NCBI GenBank assembly: GCA_900088475.1
Contig: FLMG01001070.1
Location: 62,001 to 126,000, forward strand
Direction: 5' to 3'
DNA: 64,000 nucleotides
DNA from: Hyphochytrium catenoides
Lineage: Eukaryota > Protista > Hyphochytriomycota
This document shows positions 1-7,291 of this stretch, one piece after another. The translations under genes were made by a program, and so were the position numbers. The first letter of the stretch is position 1, and every line of letters begins with the position of its first letter. The notes below the pieces were generated by a model. That model had not been told where the DNA came from. It worked only from the letters and a program-made list of their open reading frames with translations, and searched no databases.

Positions 1-815
1 AGGAAGCAGCAGCAAGCAATGTCATCAAAAAGATAGTAGCACTGCAGTACAAATAGCTATTAGATTCTTCTTCTCTAGTACAAGCTGCTCTCAAGGATCA
101 CATCCTCAGCAGATCAACAATCATCATGAAGTGCTGCGTGGTGCCTGTGACTTGGTCAGGACTCAGGACCCGAACGACCTTGCTCCCTCCGATGACCAGG
201 TTAAGACCTGTCAGGGACCCAAAAGAAGACTTGTTGCTTGGGACCTCGTGTGAGAACCTGAAGGACGGACTTCTGAACCGAAAAGTCAATGGAGAACCTA
301 AATTGTGGCCTGAAGCTGACCCAAAAGACGAGTTGGACCAAGTTAAAAGCATTATCAGACCTGGGCGGGATTTAGAGGAAAAAGTCATGGACGAGGAATA
401 TCCGAAACTACTGGGCTCACTTGAAGTTGACCCGAACTATCCACCTGTCCTGCAGAAGTTATTGGTTACTAGGAGGCAATCATAGGCAAAAGCGGCTAAC
501 GGCGATCTGCTGTCATTGATTTTTATTAGAGCTTTGATGATAAGAGAGGAGGAAGGGATGATGTGTGATGCGAGCTCAGTTCTGTTTTGAAGGCCCACTG
601 AGGCTCAAGAAGGGTGATCGGTAGACGCTGATGAGACTAGAATAATGCAATCTACGAAGCCAATCCCCTGAGGACGTGCACCAACACTCACACCCCGTGT
701 ATCGCTATGGCGTAATCGGGGTCAGAGGGAGGATGAGTTTCTAAGCTTTGTAGAGACAATGTGGGAGAAGAGCTGAGTGGAGCCGCTCCGTCAGCGGGGT
801 CATCAACACAAGCCA

Positions 816-963
816 TTGCTTGCCTAATATCTGTCAAGACTACATTTACGTTCTCCTCGGTGGTATAGCTCGCCTAAGTTCCACCCTGCTTGCTTGCCTA
901 ATATCTGTCAAGACTACATTTACGTTCTCCTCGGTGGTATAGCTCGCCTAAGTTCCACCCTGC
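816..963. repeat. Perfect 74-bp tandem duplication (816-889 / 890-963)
   Basis: ttgcttgcctaatatctgtcaagactac...cctaagttccaccctgc occurs twice head-to-tail, ending 54 bp upstream of the ATG at 1018. Confidence 0.95.
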
Positions 964-1017: not shown

Positions 1018-3311
1018 ATGGAGCTTTTCTTTACAATTGACCAGCGCCTGCATGGCAAAGGCCCTATTATATACAAGTGGAATCCACAAGGCTCCTTGGT
1101 TGCCTCCTCCGGCAGCTCTCGGGTCGTACAGCTATTTGACAGCAATGGAGAGATGGTAGACCAAGTGGTCCCTCCGTCACCGAGGTAAATATCTAATATC
1201 CTGGGCCTGTTTAATACCTCGGTTTCTTAGCCTGAAACAAATGCACAGTGTCGTGATGGCCCTAGAGTGGGACAAGAATGGCGTCATCTTAGCAATCATG
1301 CAGGACCATTCACCTATAATTGTGCTATGGCACTCAAGTACGAAGTCCTCACAGCAACTGGATGTCGGAGTGAAGGATCTAACTCTACTGTCGTGGTCGA
1401 GGACAGGGCCTCAGGTAAACTACCCAGACTTAATCTGGACTCTTCTCCCGTCAGCAGGACTAAGTGGAAGCCCTTCAGTTAGCAATCGGGACAGGAAAGG
1501 GCTCTGTAACGCTCTATAATTCTGCTTCAGGAGAGCGATGTACAGCACAAGCTAGGCATAAGAAACGAATCCTTTGTGGCGCCTGGAACAAAGAGAATAG
1601 GTTCGCCTATGGCTCAGAAGATAAGCAGGTACGAGAAGTCTAAAGAGCTCAACTCAAAAGAGCTGTTGCGGTTGCACGCAAGGACGTATCTGGGAGAGGG
1701 AAAGAGGGGGCTAGCGTGGAGGAAGAGGAAGGAAAGAGAAAGAAGGGAGAGTAACAGAAGAAATAGTGCAGTGGAAGTAAATTCTGAGCGGATATCGTCT
1801 CAGATTACCATATGCGATGCCCGTGGAGCGACATTAGACCAAATGAACATCAAGAGCCGACCGTTGGACATCGCGGTAAGGACTTTGATACGTACTGCTT
1901 ATCAGTCAGGCTGTGAGTCCAAGCCCTACACCGTCTCCCGTTGTGGTACTTGACGATTTTCTTGACGCTTAAGGGCGCGTACAGAAAGCATCTGGTCCTT
2001 GTTAAATCCTCTCGCTCTTCCCTGCTCTGCTCTGCTCTTTTATAATATGGTCATACTTATCTTCTCAGCTCCATCTTTTGCTCCTCTGCCTGGGGCTGAG
2101 CTGGTGCGTAATTTGATGCGCCGCCGGGACTTACCTTTTGATTCCTTTCTTTCCTCGCCCATAGTTTGGAGGTAGGACTGTAGACAATGAAGGAACGGTA
2201 TCCGTCAACATGGAGGGAAAGACCATTCTTCTTTACAACATGAACGAGAGAGAGAATGCGCTCGAGCTGGCGTTCCAACCCAAGTATGGCACAATAGTCT
2301 GCTACAGGTGGTTTGGAGATGGTTACATCCTGGCTGGCTTTGCCTCGGGCTTTGTCATTATGATCTCTACCCGTAAGTTCCTCTTCTCATACATGCCACC
2401 CCTTACCTCTATCTTGCTACCGGATATCTGTCGTCTCTGGGACTTTCGAGAGCTGCGTAGGCGTGACACGAAAGACCTGCTCACTTCTTGGTCCTGTAGA
2501 TCACAGGCTATTGGCTTCTCTCTATGCGGCTGCTTCATATGTGTTAGAAAGTCCTGGCTGGCTTGCGCTTTCTTCAAACGTCGTTCGTCATTTGTACCTC
2601 CTAGACTTGCAAAGTGCCGCCAATTCTTTTTTGTCTTATGAGTTTCCTCATCTGACATTTCTTATTCGTCTGAGTGCTGACCATGCTACCATTGTCTAGA
2701 TATCTCTGACATTGGCAAAGAGCAGATGAGTGCAAAGTTCCACTCTGACTCTATGCGTGACATTGCCCCCTTCTTCGAGAAGGCACAGATAGCTACTTGC
2801 AATGGCGACACTTTGAAGATTGTTGACTTGAAGAGTTGGAAGGTACGATCTCTCATCTCAACACTTCAGTATTTGGGAGTTCAGTGCGAACACCTCCATG
2901 GCCATTCGCGACTCTCTCCTACCTAAATGAACCTCAGGTTGGCTCGTTCCTGCATCCTTACGCTGACGGATCTCGTGGTCGCTTTCCTAGGAACTCACAA
3001 GTGAGAGCATAGCTAAAGAAGCAGGGTTGCTAGACAAGATCCAGTGGGCTGCCGACGGCGCCATACTAAGCGTCAGCAGCCGCAGCGGGTGCTTATACAA
3101 CTTCTTCGTGACGAGCAACAAGAAGCAGCCCCGTCTCTCTCCTCCTGCCGACTCCATGATGGTTTACACCCTTGGGTCCTTACTGCCCCTGGAGATGGTG
3201 GCGACCGTGTCGGTAGTACTCTTGGTATTGCTGTTTGGAACAGTTTATGGTCTCCAAGTCTCTCTCAGAGACTTGTTGAGCGCCATTTTCTCACTGCACG
3301 CAGTGATATAG
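1018..3311 (+). CDS. IFT144/WDR19-like protein: first WD40 propeller only plus C-terminal hydrophobic segment (about 405 aa, 7 exons)
   Basis: Stitched exons read MELFFTIDQRLHGKGPIIYKWNPQGSL..., VMALEWDKNGVILAI, LAIGTGKGSVTLYN...HKKRILCGAWNKENRFAYGSEDKQ, ELAFQPKYGTIVCYRWFGDGYILAGFASG, LDKIQWAADGAILSVSSRSGCLYNF. These are colinear with the N-terminal propeller of WDR19/IFT144. Introns are GT-AG; stop at 3309-3311. Confidence 0.85.
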
Positions 3312-3749: not shown

Positions 3750-5391
3750 TCAATCTTCTGCATCTCCATTAGCCTGAGGCCCTGCTCCTTTCTGCTGGCT
3801 ATAGGCTGACTGCCGTGAGACCTTCACGCCGAACGTGAGAAAGGCTGTATGCCCTCTCATTACAGGCTCAGCCTTTGCAACAAGCCTTGGCTTCTTGTTA
3901 CTACCATCTGAGGACCGTACCGTTAATAGATGCATAACAGCGTCAATCAAGCGGAAAAGTTATACTCCCAACCGCGAGCAGAATTTAGTACGTGCAAGTA
4001 ACACAGTCGGATATGACAGACATGCAGAGGGGTCCAACGGGTCTATTGACTTCGAAAGACTGGCTGCGAAAAAAGGTATCAGAACTGCATTAGGGCAAGA
4101 AAGCACCACCTGAGCTAGGCACATGTAAGGCCGGACTACCAAAGTCTGGCTCCACTGGTTCATAGTTGCGTACATCATAGGTCTTGAGACGGGTCTCTAT
4201 CGTTTTGATCACTATAGACTTCTTCTTAGCATCAAAATGGATAGGGGCCACAGAGAGGACAAGCAACTCCAAGAGAGGTGTAGACAACAGATAATAAGAA
4301 GGCCGTACCCCAAAGCAAACGGACTCACTCTGAAATTTTAGTGCTCGCAACGCCTCACAGAACTTCTGTGTTTGCTCTATACAAGGTGAGTAAGAACAAA
4401 TACTCCCATAGTCCTTCAAAACGAAGGCTGCATGCTCGGCCGCCAGCCAGGGAGACGGAAGGTCAAGAAAGACAGCGTCTGCTCGACCCTTGAGACTATC
4501 TCCAAAGCCATCACTAGGGCCCGAACGAGAGAACGTCGAGGAGGGTACCGAGTGTGTGGGACAGAGGAGCGCGAAGCGAGGCACAACATGGCAAGAGCCA
4601 GGGTAAAAGCATGGGTGAGATGCGGGTTGACAAACTACAGGGCAGCATTTAACCCACCTGCAGACATCCCTGTGCTCTATGGTTACCACGTCCGCCATGC
4701 CGTTTACCAAAAATTCATCCCTATGGGTCGCCTTTGTTAGCCTGAAAAAGGAGAGATATGAAGAAGTCTCTGTGCTAACCTCGCTATCTCCGCTCGCGTC
4801 TCATTAAACTCAAATGTGTAGACATGACCATGGGGTGCCACTGCTCTAGCTAGCGCAGTTGTTAGCGCCCCACTGCCGGTACCTGAGGATTACATCGTGA
4901 GTGTCTTGGAAGGAAGGAAGGAAACTCTCATCTGCCATTACCCGACTCGACTACAATGCATCCAGGTCTGAGGTCCAAGTGTAAGCAAACGGCAGCGGCA
5001 TCTGAGGTGAAGACAATCTGCGTGCGGTGTCTTAGCGCCTGGTTCCACAACTCAGGAGTTGGCATTAAGACGAAGATCCAGCCGCCTTTCTTTCTAGAAT
5101 GAATCTATGTGGTGCAGCTGTTAGAATCTATTCTAGTCTAACCAGGTAGTCTCAAGGCATAAGTACCTTGGAGCCAAACGATTTGCCAATAATATCATCA
5201 TGAAAGAAGGCGCCGTACTTGTTCTGGTATATTTTGCCATGCGTGGCGTATTCAAAGGAGAGCGAGTCATGTCGCTCAAAAATAATAAATAGATCTCCCT
5301 CCTTAATAGTGTTGGACGGAGTTACACGTGTCAACGGGCATGAGCTGGAGCCATCGGCGTCGGACCTGACTGCATACTTTGTGAAGTCCAT
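3750..5391 (-). CDS. TRM61: tRNA (adenine58-N1)-methyltransferase catalytic subunit (multi-exon)
   Basis: Exons encode [91 protein letters not shown], all typical of Trm61/GCD14. Confidence 0.93.
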
Positions 5392-5922
5392 GAGGTACAC
5401 CTTGCCAAGGCTGGAAGCAGTTTAGAAGGTGGTGCACCTGGAGAGAGATAGACAGCCAACTGTGCTGGGAAGGCAAGGCCCGGTATCGGTGCTGATCACA
5501 TACCACCGACCGAGTAACGTGTATTGAGATGGAAAGAGATCTCCATGAGCTGATGATCAGAAAGAAATGGAGATTGCAGACAGAGCTCACCTGATGCCCG
5601 ATGAATGGAGGTGGATCAGTGTACAGTAACCGATATAAACTCAACAGAGATCAGGAAGAAAGATTACTGCTTTTAAGGTGCGGAGATTGGCCGTTACCTG
5701 TCTCCATCGCGCCAACAGCCGCAGCTCACTCACCCTTTCCTAGTTCCTTGCTGTCTGTTGGTACAATGGAGACAGCTATTGGCTCACCCAAGTATCATCA
5801 TAAGCCAACATTGCCAGCCATGAGGAGCACCACCAGAGCCTAATCAGAACGCAGGAGAGAATGTGCCGGCTATAGTGTCCTCAGAGCCCGCTTCAGAGAT
5901 ATTAGGAGTCAAGCCTGTCAGT

Positions 5923-6712: not shown

Positions 6713-7291
6713 TCAGAATAGAGGCGTGAACAACCACTTACTCTGCTCAGGGAAGTTCTCTGCCACGCTTCTTAAGGGGGCCATCTGCCAGGTGATAGGG
6801 CGGCTTCGGAACGAACGGACATTCCGTTTGTTCTCCTCTTCTCTCTTCTCCGTGGAGGTGCTAAAGTTTACTTTTCGGAAATAAACTCCAGCTCCATGCA
6901 CACAGTGTCGTTCGTCTGTTGGTGTCTGATATCCCTCTCCTCTAAAGACGTGGCCTAGGTGGCCACCGCAACAAGCACACGCAACTTCGTTGATGGGAGC
7001 AGAGGCCTTACTTTTTTGTCCTAAACCAGGTGACTCTACTGCTCCTGGAAGCGCCTGAAAGAACGATGGCCAACCAGTGCCGGAGTCAAATTTGTGTGTT
7101 GACTGATAGAGAGGGGAATTACATCCTGCGCAATGGTAGATGCCAGAATCAAAGTTCTTCTCGTGCTTGTCCCATCCTGACGTCTCATCCTTCTTCAATC
7201 TCAGCACTTCATACTGTTCCTTCGATAGATGTTGCTGCCACTCACTCGATGTCCACTTGCGGTATAACTCACAGCTATAATCGTCGCACAT
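6713..7291 (-). CDS. msrB: Peptide methionine sulfoxide reductase MsrB (Zn-binding, intronless, divergent)
   Basis: EWQQHLSKEQYEVLR, GIYHCAGC, KFDSGTGWPSF, CACCGGHLGHVF, ERHCV; two CxxC motifs. Confidence 0.88.
   Translation of the reverse strand: MCDDYSCELYRKWTSSEWQQHLSKEQYEVLRLKKDETSGWDKHEKNFDSGIYHCAGCNSPLYQSTHKFDSGTGWPSFFQALPGAVESPGLGQKSKASAPINEVACACCGGHLGHVFRGEGYQTPTDERHCVHGAGVYFRKVNFSTSTEKREEENKRNVRSFRSRPITWQMAPLRSVAENFPEQSKWLFTPLF

What the first reader, a model, noticed from the sequence alone, without database searches (positions are those of the whole stretch)
1018..3311. Miniature IFT144/WDR19 derivative: one beta-propeller ending in a predicted tail membrane anchor
Seen: seven exons follow the first WD40 propeller of IFT144 closely. 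After GCLYNFF comes a basic/Pro linker, a long hydrophobic stretch (LLPLEMVATVSVVLLVLLFGTVYGL...LLSAIFSLHAVI) and a stop. TRM61 ends only about 440 bp downstream on the opposite strand, leaving no room for the rest. Established: IFT144 is a roughly 1300-1400 aa soluble IFT-A core subunit with two propellers and a TPR solenoid, related to vesicle coat proteins. Inference: this is an intact, intron-preserving paralog of about 405 aa, repurposed as a tail-anchored membrane propeller, perhaps a cargo or IFT docking adaptor at the ciliary base or endomembranes. The segment MMVYTLGSLL loosely resembles the start of propeller 2, so the anchor may derive from it.
Basis: partly seen in the sequence, partly recalled or inferred. 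Interest (0 to 1): 0.75.

Follow-up and report, generated by a model that had tools for sequence, protein, structure and literature searches.

The report
Membrane-anchored short paralog of IFT144
This is a real, complete gene for a 408-residue protein made of the first beta-propeller of the cilium-transport protein IFT144 plus a C-terminal membrane anchor. It belongs to an undescribed family conserved across water moulds, brown algae and related protists, which is kept under selection even in species that have lost their flagella.

Summary
Seven GT-AG exons (1018-3311, +) encode 408 aa that follow Pfam's "WDR19 first beta-propeller" from position 2 to 325. The protein then has a linker, a 23-residue hydrophobic helix and a short terminal helix before the stop.

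The gene is not truncated or mis-modelled. The same layout, tail included, recurs end to end in about 40 complete proteins of 404-461 aa from oomycetes, brown algae, dictyochophytes, Platysulcus and two rhizarian transcriptomes. These form one clade (support 96/91), separate from canonical IFT144.

A full-length IFT144 probe finds no second propeller or TPR region anywhere in the 64-kb window.

The family is intact and under purifying selection (omega 0.15) in Peronospora. It is also intact in Hyaloperonospora, which has lost its flagella and its canonical IFT144. A purely ciliary role is therefore unlikely.

My best reading is a tail-anchored endomembrane receptor that shows an IFT144-type propeller to the cytosol. 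Its partner is unknown.

I found no paper describing the family; databases name its members only automatically. The scan's own notes do not record this family elsewhere in this genome.

The parts
1018..1184 (+). Exon 1 (start ATG at 1018; ends in phase 2): N-terminal strand and blade 1 of the propeller
   Evidence: splice sites, frame. (PF23389 positions 2-36). The N-terminus MELFFT aligns with MELLFT and MELNFV of family members. The intron after it is shared in position and phase with the oomycete orthologs and with canonical IFT144.
1249..1414 (+). Exon 2: propeller
   Evidence: (PF23389 positions 41-94, E = 6e-15).
1479..1628 (+). Exon 3: propeller
   Evidence: (PF23389 positions 96-144, E = 5e-14).
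1804..1875 (+). Exon 4 (24 aa): propeller
   Evidence: Too short for Pfam. It aligns without gaps to the family (ITICDARGATLDQ...). Exons 3 and 4 together (222 nt) equal oomycete exon 3.
2165..2372 (+). Exon 5: the most conserved propeller segment (FGG...SVNM...ELAFQPKYG...WFGDGYI)
   Evidence: PF23389 positions 181-243, E = 2e-24. (IFT144 PDB chains, E = 2.5e-14). (53% identity to a copepod IFT144).
2700..2842 (+). Exon 6: propeller
   Evidence: (PF23389 positions 246-291, E = 2.5e-5).
2991..3107 (+). Exon 7, first part: last propeller blade, ending in GCLYNFF
   Evidence: PF23389 positions 299-325.. AF2 of this exon gives strands at residues 14-19, 25-30 and 35-39.
3108..3185 (+). Exon 7: basic and Pro-rich linker with a short pre-anchor helix (VTSNKKQPRLSPPADSMMVYTLGSLL)
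   Evidence: Low pLDDT, with a short helix at residues 54-62 of the exon. The equivalent segment is disordered in the proxy model. It is variable in length and sequence across the family.
3186..3254 (+). Exon 7: predicted transmembrane helix (23 residues, PLEMVATVSVVLLVLLFGTVYGL)
   Evidence: AF2 helix at residues 66-88 of the exon, block pLDDT 84-95. KD19 is 2.50. In 37 of 37 family members the tail is more hydrophobic than any propeller segment.
3255..3311 (+). Exon 7: conserved C-terminal segment (QVSLRDLLSAIFSLHAVI) and the stop codon at 3309-3311
   Evidence: It aligns without gaps to the family terminal motif ...V-S-x-x-D-L/V-L/V-R-A-M/L-T/S-G-F-x-E-x-V/I/L. AF2 gives a helix at residues 92-105. 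Omega for helix plus terminus is 0.05-0.20 in oomycetes.

Best explanation
The locus is a complete, functional gene for a tail-anchored membrane protein. Its cytosolic part is a seven-bladed beta-propeller descended from the first propeller of IFT144/WDR19.

Shown here:
- The seven-exon model is intact.
- It is orthologous, end to end and tail included, to a family of 404-461-aa proteins in oomycetes, brown algae, dictyochophytes, Platysulcus and rhizarian transcriptomes.
- The family is one clade, separate from canonical IFT144.
- The rest of IFT144 is absent from the window.
- The family evolves under purifying selection, including in lineages without flagella.

Inferred:
- The single hydrophobic helix, 37-43 residues from the C-terminus and with no N-terminal signal, is inserted post-translationally.
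- Insertion is most likely into the ER or early secretory pathway, because the helix is strongly hydrophobic and the tail is not basic.
- The propeller then faces the cytosol. A conserved helix of about 18 residues lies on the far side of the membrane, where its conservation suggests a specific partner.
- The propeller serves as a membrane-fixed docking platform for a cytosolic partner in a process that does not need a flagellum. The partner is unknown.
For: Gene model and homology:
- establish the gene model and IFT144 homology.
- a search with exon 7 alone finds proteins of 420-443 aa that match through the tail and end there.
- the model aligns over residues 1-401/408 at 40-51% identity to about 25 complete relatives. 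Each has a hydrophobic segment 37-43 residues from its end.
- the window keeps 42 of 47 invariant and 43 of 53 near-invariant family columns.

Distribution and independence of the short form:
- Searches give the taxa. Several members are complete ORFs from transcriptomes, so the short form is transcribed in relatives.
- in three oomycete genomes the gene ends 240-330 bp before a convergent VIT1 gene. This is an independent context with the same short form.
- the oomycete introns match window introns 1, 2 and 4.
- full-length IFT144 matches the window only through its residues 8-308.

Structure:
- the AF2 model of the proxy P0018 (pLDDT 89.6) has a propeller, a disordered linker, a 23-residue helix and a terminal helix. 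The best Foldseek hits are IFT144 chains (8bbg_A, 39% identity, rmsd 1.9).
- the window's own exon 7 folds the same way.

Phylogeny and selection:
- the short clade has support 96/91 and the canonical clade 96/85.
- omega is 0.06-0.15. It is 0.148 at dS 0.84 between two aflagellate Peronospora species.
- canonical IFT144 (PITG_18065) has no ortholog in H. arabidopsidis. Peronospora, Hyaloperonospora and Peronosclerospora lack flagellated stages.
- flanking charges are weakly positive on the N side and negative on the C side.
Against:
- Membrane insertion, topology and location are predictions only.
- The window's tail departs from the family at two well-conserved positions. The invariant Pro before the helix is Ser, and the near-invariant Gly of the terminal motif is Ser.
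- The window has no K or R in the 15 residues before the helix.
- The whole-protein AF2 model is of a 51%-identical proxy, not of the window protein.
- No partner or process is identified.
- I could not show that a separate full-length IFT144 exists in this genome. It is inferred from the organism's many flagellar genes and from oomycetes.
Confidence: 0.72

Rival explanations
1. A ciliary adaptor. The anchored propeller sits at the flagellar base or on flagellum-bound vesicles. There it docks IFT-A or its cargo by mimicking the membrane-facing IFT144 propeller.
For: The propeller remains 39% identical to human IFT144 propeller 1. In trains the IFT144 WD domains project toward the membrane and contact the IFT122 TPR and an unidentified density (PMC10191852). 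Most taxa with the family are flagellate.
Against: The gene is intact and under purifying selection in Peronospora, and intact in Hyaloperonospora and Peronosclerospora. These lack flagella, and canonical IFT144 and IFT122 have no ortholog in H. arabidopsidis. It is also present in the transcriptome of the amoeboid vampyrellid Leptophrys. A dual role is not excluded.
Confidence: 0.15
2. The hydrophobic C-terminus is not a membrane anchor. It is a buried or oligomerising helix of a soluble protein, for example a coiled bundle or a helix that packs on the propeller.
For: No experiment shows insertion. The post-helix segment is better conserved than the helix itself, as expected for a protein-protein contact.
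Against: The 19-residue hydropathy is 2.15-3.05 in all 37 members, against at most 1.69 in any propeller segment. The helix sequence varies freely while its hydrophobicity and length (about 21-23 residues) are kept. AF2 places it as an isolated helix after a disordered linker, not packed on the propeller.
Confidence: 0.07
3. An artefact or relic: a truncated 5' fragment of IFT144 left by a rearrangement or misassembly, read into non-coding sequence to give a chance hydrophobic tail.
For: Retroelement remains lie just upstream of the window. A weak colinear similarity to canonical IFT144 runs into the start of the tail.
Against: The tail aligns without gaps to the tails of about 40 relatives, including complete transcriptome ORFs, down to the stop. 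All splice sites and 42 of 47 invariant residues are intact. Tail omega is 0.05-0.29 in relatives.
Confidence: 0.03
4. A Sec12/PREB-type guanine-nucleotide exchange factor. Sec12 has the same layout (a cytosolic propeller, one membrane span, a short lumenal end), so this could be the lineage's Sar1 activator.
For: The architecture and size (about 400-470 aa) are the same. The resemblance is from my own knowledge of Sec12, not from a tool.
Against: The nearest sequences and folds are IFT144 at 28-39% identity, and no Sec12 chain is in the Foldseek top 50.
Confidence: 0.03

Closest known systems
IFT144 / WDR19 (IFT-A core subunit)
   Same: It is homologous over the whole first beta-propeller (PF23389 positions 2-325). 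The proxy is 39% identical to human IFT144, with rmsd 1.9 Å over 352 aligned columns. One intron is shared in position and phase.
   Different: It has no second propeller, TPR solenoid or zinc-ribbon end. It has a membrane helix and a conserved terminal motif instead. It forms a separate clade. It is retained where canonical IFT144 is lost.
Sec12 / PREB (ER-anchored propeller, Sar1 GEF)
   Same: It has the same overall layout and size: a cytosolic seven-bladed propeller, a single C-terminal membrane span and a short far-side end. It is a useful model for how a membrane-fixed propeller can recruit a cytosolic factor.
   Different: There is no detectable sequence or preferential fold relationship, and no K-loop. 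This is an analogy only.
Tail-anchored proteins in general (e.g. SNAREs, Sec61-beta, cytochrome b5)
   Same: It has a single hydrophobic helix within about 45 residues of the C-terminus, no N-terminal signal sequence and a folded cytosolic N-terminal domain.
   Different: The far-side tail of about 18 residues is conserved in sequence and predicted helical, which is unusual for a plain anchor. The insertion pathway and target membrane are unknown.
N-terminal propellers of coat proteins (COPI alpha/beta-prime, clathrin heavy chain)
   Same: They belong to the same proto-coatomer lineage as IFT-A. Their propellers act as peptide- or cargo-binding platforms next to membranes (PMC10191852 and the Hesketh preprint).
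   Different: Those propellers are soluble and are recruited to membranes through the rest of the coat. Here the propeller is fixed to the membrane and has no solenoid.

Membership tests
Canonical IFT144/WDR19 | First beta-propeller of WDR19 type (PF23389) | tested here: met
Canonical IFT144/WDR19 | Second beta-propeller (PF15911), TPR solenoid and C-terminal zinc-ribbon, about 1300-1400 aa in all | tested here: not met
   The protein ends at residue 408. tblastn with a 1380-aa IFT144 finds nothing for residues 309-1380 in the 64-kb window. Relatives also end there.
Canonical IFT144/WDR19 | Groups with canonical IFT144 in a tree | tested here: not met
   The short clade has support 96/91 and the canonical clade 96/85.
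Canonical IFT144/WDR19 | Subunit of the IFT-A complex; co-occurs with cilia | tested here: not met
   Co-occurrence fails, because the family is present in aflagellate downy mildews that lack IFT144. Complex membership cannot be tested with these tools.
Short anchored IFT144-like family (unnamed; UniRef 'WDR19 first beta-propeller domain-containing protein') | 404-461 aa; one WDR19-type propeller aligned end to end | tested here: met
   residues 1-401/408 align at 40-51% identity, with E down to 2e-149.
Short anchored IFT144-like family (unnamed; UniRef 'WDR19 first beta-propeller domain-containing protein') | Hydrophobic helix 37-43 residues from the C-terminus | tested here: met
   The window's helix starts 43 residues from the end, with KD19 of 2.50. 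AF2 gives a helix.
Short anchored IFT144-like family (unnamed; UniRef 'WDR19 first beta-propeller domain-containing protein') | Conserved pre-helix K/R-P and the terminal D-L/V-L/V-x-A-x-x-G motif | tested here: inconclusive
   D-L-L-x-A is kept. The invariant Pro is Ser and the near-invariant Gly is Ser in the window.
Short anchored IFT144-like family (unnamed; UniRef 'WDR19 first beta-propeller domain-containing protein') | Shared intron positions with orthologs | tested here: met
   All three oomycete introns coincide with window introns 1, 2 and 4.
Tail-anchored membrane proteins | Single C-terminal transmembrane helix and no N-terminal signal peptide | tested here: met
   The N-terminal 35 residues have a maximum KD10 of 0.50. 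This is prediction only.
Tail-anchored membrane proteins | Post-translational insertion (GET/EMC) with the N-terminus in the cytosol | not testable with these tools
   Only a weak charge bias supports it: the N flank is net positive and the C flank net negative across 37 members.
Sec12/PREB | K-loop GGGGxxxxG-phi-x-N and Sec12-type propeller | tested here: not met
   No match in 37 members. No Sec12 chain is among the top 50 Foldseek hits. The motif was recalled from memory.

The most novel reading that the evidence does not exclude
The anchored short form may be an old paralog, not a recent stramenopile offshoot. In the tree it lies outside a clade that unites animal IFT144 with six unnamed protist IFT144s. 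Its internal branching mirrors the Rhizaria/stramenopile split, with Platysulcus at the base of the stramenopiles. If some of those protist sequences are from SAR organisms, the duplication predates the divergence of SAR from other eukaryotes. The family would then be a surviving membrane-fixed relative of the IFT-A/coat propellers that works in non-ciliary trafficking. It would be a rare direct handle on how IFT components were drawn from, or returned to, the endomembrane system.
Probability: 0.15. Interest if true: 0.85.

Novelty: new variant of a known kind. Interest (0 to 1): 0.62.

Why it matters
IFT-A subunits are regarded as soluble, cilium-bound coat relatives. Non-ciliary roles of IFT proteins are debated and hard to separate from ciliary ones. 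This family is a natural experiment: an IFT144 propeller cut free of the IFT-A scaffold and fixed to a membrane. It is kept by selection in organisms with no flagellum and no IFT144.

It gives a tractable entry point, since Phytophthora and Saprolegnia can be transformed, to ask what an IFT144-type propeller binds on its own. The answer may also help identify the still-unassigned density on the IFT144/IFT140 propellers in trains.

For annotation, database entries named "WD repeat-containing protein 19" of about 450 aa in oomycetes and brown algae are not fragments of IFT144. They should not be counted as evidence of IFT-A presence in phylogenetic profiling.

Tried and rejected
1. Misassembly or unspliced 3' end. 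I considered donors such as tcg|gtagta inside exon 7, and weak colinearity with human WDR19 residues 322-370. I rejected this because the whole tail is conserved to the stop in relatives.

2. Sec12/PREB identity. Rejected.

3. The exon-7 search also returned low-complexity or repeat proteins (P0001, P0005, P0012), which are chance matches to the hydrophobic stretch.

It returned only animal sequences and no stramenopile canonical IFT144.

5. Cluster look-ups gave no organism names for the canonical protist IFT144s (L005, L006, L009, L010). The date of the duplication therefore stays open.

6. The ESM Atlas feature search on the tail and the Atlas fold search gave no family-level lead. Pfam finds nothing in the tail.

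7. Word searches of the scan's notes for IFT terms found nothing in this genome.

8. dN/dS for the window gene itself is not possible, because its nearest relative is 56% identical and synonymous sites are saturated. Most environmental pairs were saturated too.

9. The bacterial promoter/terminator scan was irrelevant for a eukaryote and found nothing.

Full report
**Method limits.** The spliced 408-aa model was never typed into or sent to any search, fold or database tool. All such searches were done exon by exon, by window reference, or with relatives' protein ids. The exons were joined only inside local scripts, for translation, hydropathy, local BLAST/MAFFT and the tree. The whole-protein AlphaFold model is therefore of the closest named relative (P0018, Florenciella parvula, 51% identical). 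No contig that I took for human was met.

**Observation.** The sequence and a script give seven exons: 1018-1184, 1249-1414, 1479-1628, 1804-1875, 2165-2372, 2700-2842 and 2991-3311. Every intron begins GTA and ends AG. The joined frame is open for 408 codons, with the stop at 3309-3311. Scanned one by one against Pfam, the exons hit PF23389 (WDR19 first beta-propeller) in order, from profile position 2 to 325. Exon 5 alone scores E = 2e-24, and its only PDB sequence hits are IFT144 chains of Tetrahymena, human and Chlamydomonas. After GCLYNFF the protein continues with VTSNKKQPRLSPPADS. Then comes the most hydrophobic 19-residue window of the protein (2.50 at residues 366-384, against 1.53 at most in the propeller). 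Eighteen more residues follow before the stop. TRM61 (Pfam GCD14 and TrmI-like_N) lies on the minus strand from about 3750-4090 to 5400.

**Is the short end real?** Three lines say yes.

- *The tail is conserved in relatives.* An exhaustive search with exon 7 alone returned proteins of 420 and 443 aa that match it from the last blade through the tail and end there, plus many fragments with the same ending. Searches seeded with P0003 and then with the family profile collected about 40 complete members of 404-461 aa. In a local comparison the window protein aligns over residues 1 to 401-408 at 40-51% identity. Every member has a hydrophobic segment 37-43 residues from its C-terminus, followed by a conserved ending of the form V-S-x-x-D-L/V-L/V-R-A-M/L-T/S-G-F-x-E-x-V/I/L. 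Several members are complete ORFs from transcriptomes (MMETSP, EukProt) or metatranscriptome contigs. The short form is therefore a mature mRNA in relatives, not an intron read-through.
- *The rest of IFT144 is absent.* A full-length IFT144 (P0185, 1380 aa) matches the window only with its residues 8-308, at 1030-2842. Nothing in 64 kb resembles the second propeller or the TPR solenoid.
- *An independent genomic context shows the same end.* In Phytophthora ramorum, Peronospora destructor and Hyaloperonospora brassicae the gene ends 240-330 bp before a convergent VIT1 gene.

The window copy keeps 42 of 47 invariant and 43 of 53 near-invariant family columns, and most changes are conservative. 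The two notable departures are in the tail: the invariant Pro before the helix is Ser, and the near-invariant Gly of the terminal motif is Ser. All three oomycete introns coincide with window introns 1, 2 and 4.

**Structure.** AlphaFold2 on P0018 with the family alignment gives a confident model (pLDDT 89.6, pTM 0.79). Its parts are:

- a seven-bladed propeller (residues 1-341);
- a disordered linker;
- a 23-residue helix (369-391);
- a terminal helix (395-403).

Foldseek against the PDB ranks IFT144 chains first: 8bbg_A (39% identity, rmsd 1.9 Å over 352 columns, E = 3e-37), then the Tetrahymena, Chlamydomonas and Leishmania IFT144 chains. Generic WD40 proteins follow at about 15% identity. 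The window's own exon 7, folded with the family tails, gives the last blade, a short helix, a 23-residue helix (exon residues 66-88, nt 3186-3254, block pLDDT 84-95) and a terminal helix (92-105).

Across 37 members the tail's hydropathy (2.15-3.05) always exceeds the best propeller segment (1.15-1.69). The N-terminus has no signal-like stretch. The flanks carry a weak positive-inside bias: the N flank averages +1.30/-0.62 charged residues per protein and the C flank +0.95/-1.97. This is the signature of a tail-anchored protein with the propeller in the cytosol. It remains a prediction.

**Relationship to IFT144.** To get canonical sequences outside animals I scanned the metagenome and metatranscriptome collection. 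I extracted six full-length canonical ORFs of 1314-1427 aa from unnamed protists. An IQ-TREE analysis of the propeller region (48 rows, LG+C20+F+G4 PMSF, rooted on a distant WD protein) gives these supports (UFBoot/SH-aLRT):

| Clade | Support |
|---|---|
| Short family | 96/91 |
| Canonical IFT144 (animals plus the six protists) | 96/85 |
| Short-family subclade holding the two rhizarian transcriptome sequences (Lapot, Leptophrys) | 97/100 |
| Stramenopile subclade, sister to the rhizarian one, with Platysulcus at its base | 96/84 |
| Window next to the oomycete lineage | 90/68 |

The window's placement agrees with earlier notes that this genome is an oomycete-related flagellate. The match between the gene tree and the organismal tree argues for vertical descent and against prey contamination. 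When the duplication happened is open. The protist canonical sequences carry no organism names. Faster evolution after duplication could also push the short clade out of the canonical group.

One intron links the two families at the DNA level. The window's intron 1 splits the codon seven residues before the Trp of W-D-K-x-G after its second base. Five canonical genomic loci do the same. The window's other introns do not match the animal positions seen in those loci.

**What it is not for.** Judelson et al. 2012 list every Chlamydomonas IFT protein in P. infestans. Their Table S1 gives canonical IFT144 (PITG_18065, FAP66) as spore-induced, without an ortholog in Hyaloperonospora arabidopsidis and with a remnant detected. 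IFT122 is likewise lost (PMC3471859). Peronospora, Hyaloperonospora and Peronosclerospora do not form flagellated zoospores (PMC6264045, PMC9997571). Yet the short gene is full length in H. brassicae, Peronospora destructor, P. belbahrii and Peronosclerospora sorghi. It is also present in Bremia, and as a tail-bearing partial model in H. arabidopsidis.

I rebuilt four oomycete CDSs exactly from their loci and computed Nei-Gojobori ratios.

| Comparison | Omega |
|---|---|
| All six pairs | 0.06-0.15 |
| P. destructor vs P. belbahrii, overall (dS 0.84; path entirely within an aflagellate genus) | 0.148 |
| Same pair, propeller | 0.13 |
| Same pair, helix plus terminus | 0.20 |
| One informative environmental pair | 0.10 |

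A protein needed only for intraflagellar transport would not be maintained like this. Leptophrys, an amoeboid vampyrellid classically described as lacking flagella (PMC3280292), is a second, weaker case.

**Most likely mechanism.** Established knowledge places the IFT144 WD domains at the membrane-facing end of IFT-A. There they touch the IFT122 TPR and an unassigned density, and propellers of the coat lineage act as docking surfaces (PMC10191852 and the Hesketh et al. preprint). The short family has kept this propeller at 39% identity to the human one, dropped everything that builds IFT-A, and added a membrane helix. I infer a tail-anchored receptor that presents the propeller to the cytosol from an endomembrane. 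The ER or early secretory pathway is the most likely target, because the helix is strongly hydrophobic and the tail is slightly acidic, not basic. I also infer that the conserved far-side helix contacts a lumenal or membrane partner. The partner, the membrane and the process are unknown.

**Rivals.**

- A ciliary docking role, possible as a second function in flagellates.
- A non-membrane role for the helix.
- A relic or artefact, effectively excluded.
- A Sec12-type exchange factor: same layout, but no K-loop and no special fold similarity.

**Novelty.** Members are in public databases, but only as "hypothetical protein", "WD repeat-containing protein 19" or "WDR19 first beta-propeller domain-containing protein". 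Full-text searches for IFT144 or WDR19 combined with truncated/paralog/transmembrane, Phytophthora, or stramenopile/duplication terms found no description of such a protein. That library lacks most subscription journals, so this is not proof of absence. The scan's own notes hold nothing on it in this genome. I class it as a new variant of a known kind: an IFT144 derivative with a new architecture and a phylogenetic profile uncoupled from cilia.

Noticed in passing
window 816-963: A perfect tandem duplication of a 74-nt unit (816-889 and 890-963, 100% identical) lies 55 bp upstream of the start codon at 1018, in the presumed promoter or 5' UTR.
   Followed up: no
window 126-485 (+): An ATG-initiated ORF of 119 aa lies upstream of the gene and has no Pfam match. 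It could be the last exon of an upstream gene or a small gene of its own.
   Followed up: partly
window 6713-7291 (-): A single-exon ORF of 192 aa is a methionine sulfoxide reductase B (Pfam SelR, E = 1.7e-33).
   Followed up: partly
window 3750-5400 (-): TRM61/GCD14 tRNA methyltransferase gene with several exons, convergent with the finding. Its 3' end was not fixed. The two genes' 3' ends are at most about 440-780 bp apart.
   Followed up: partly
P0041 (Aphanomyces invadans) and L077 7899-8816: The 462-aa Aphanomyces model carries a VIT1 (PF01988) ending in place of the family tail. VIT1 is the convergent downstream neighbour in other oomycetes, so this looks like an annotation that fused two genes.
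   Followed up: partly
P0037 (Bremia lactucae), alignment A1 columns ~135-180: The Bremia protein has an aberrant stretch of about 40 residues replacing part of a blade. This is most likely a mis-called intron in the deposited model, not a real change.
   Followed up: no
P0139 (Peronosclerospora sorghi, PsorP6_011989): A second, 185-aa fragment of the family sits on the same 13.7-Mb contig as the full copy (P0032). It ends before the anchor. This fits the dispersed pseudogenes reported for this genome (PMC9997571).
   Followed up: no
P0064 / P0070 (Florenciella parvula transcripts): A transcript variant follows P0018 to residue 363 and then diverges into an unrelated 130-residue end without the anchor. 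This may be intron retention or an alternative 3' end that would give a soluble form.
   Followed up: no
P0096 cluster (705 aa) and L038 / P0149 (596-641 aa): Some environmental members are much longer than the rest (596-705 aa) but still end in the family tail. Where the extra length sits was not looked at.
   Followed up: no
L056, L058, L076: Metatranscriptome contigs encode a WD protein of about 500-550 aa that is only about 23% identical to IFT144 propeller 1. I used it as the outgroup and did not identify it.
   Followed up: no
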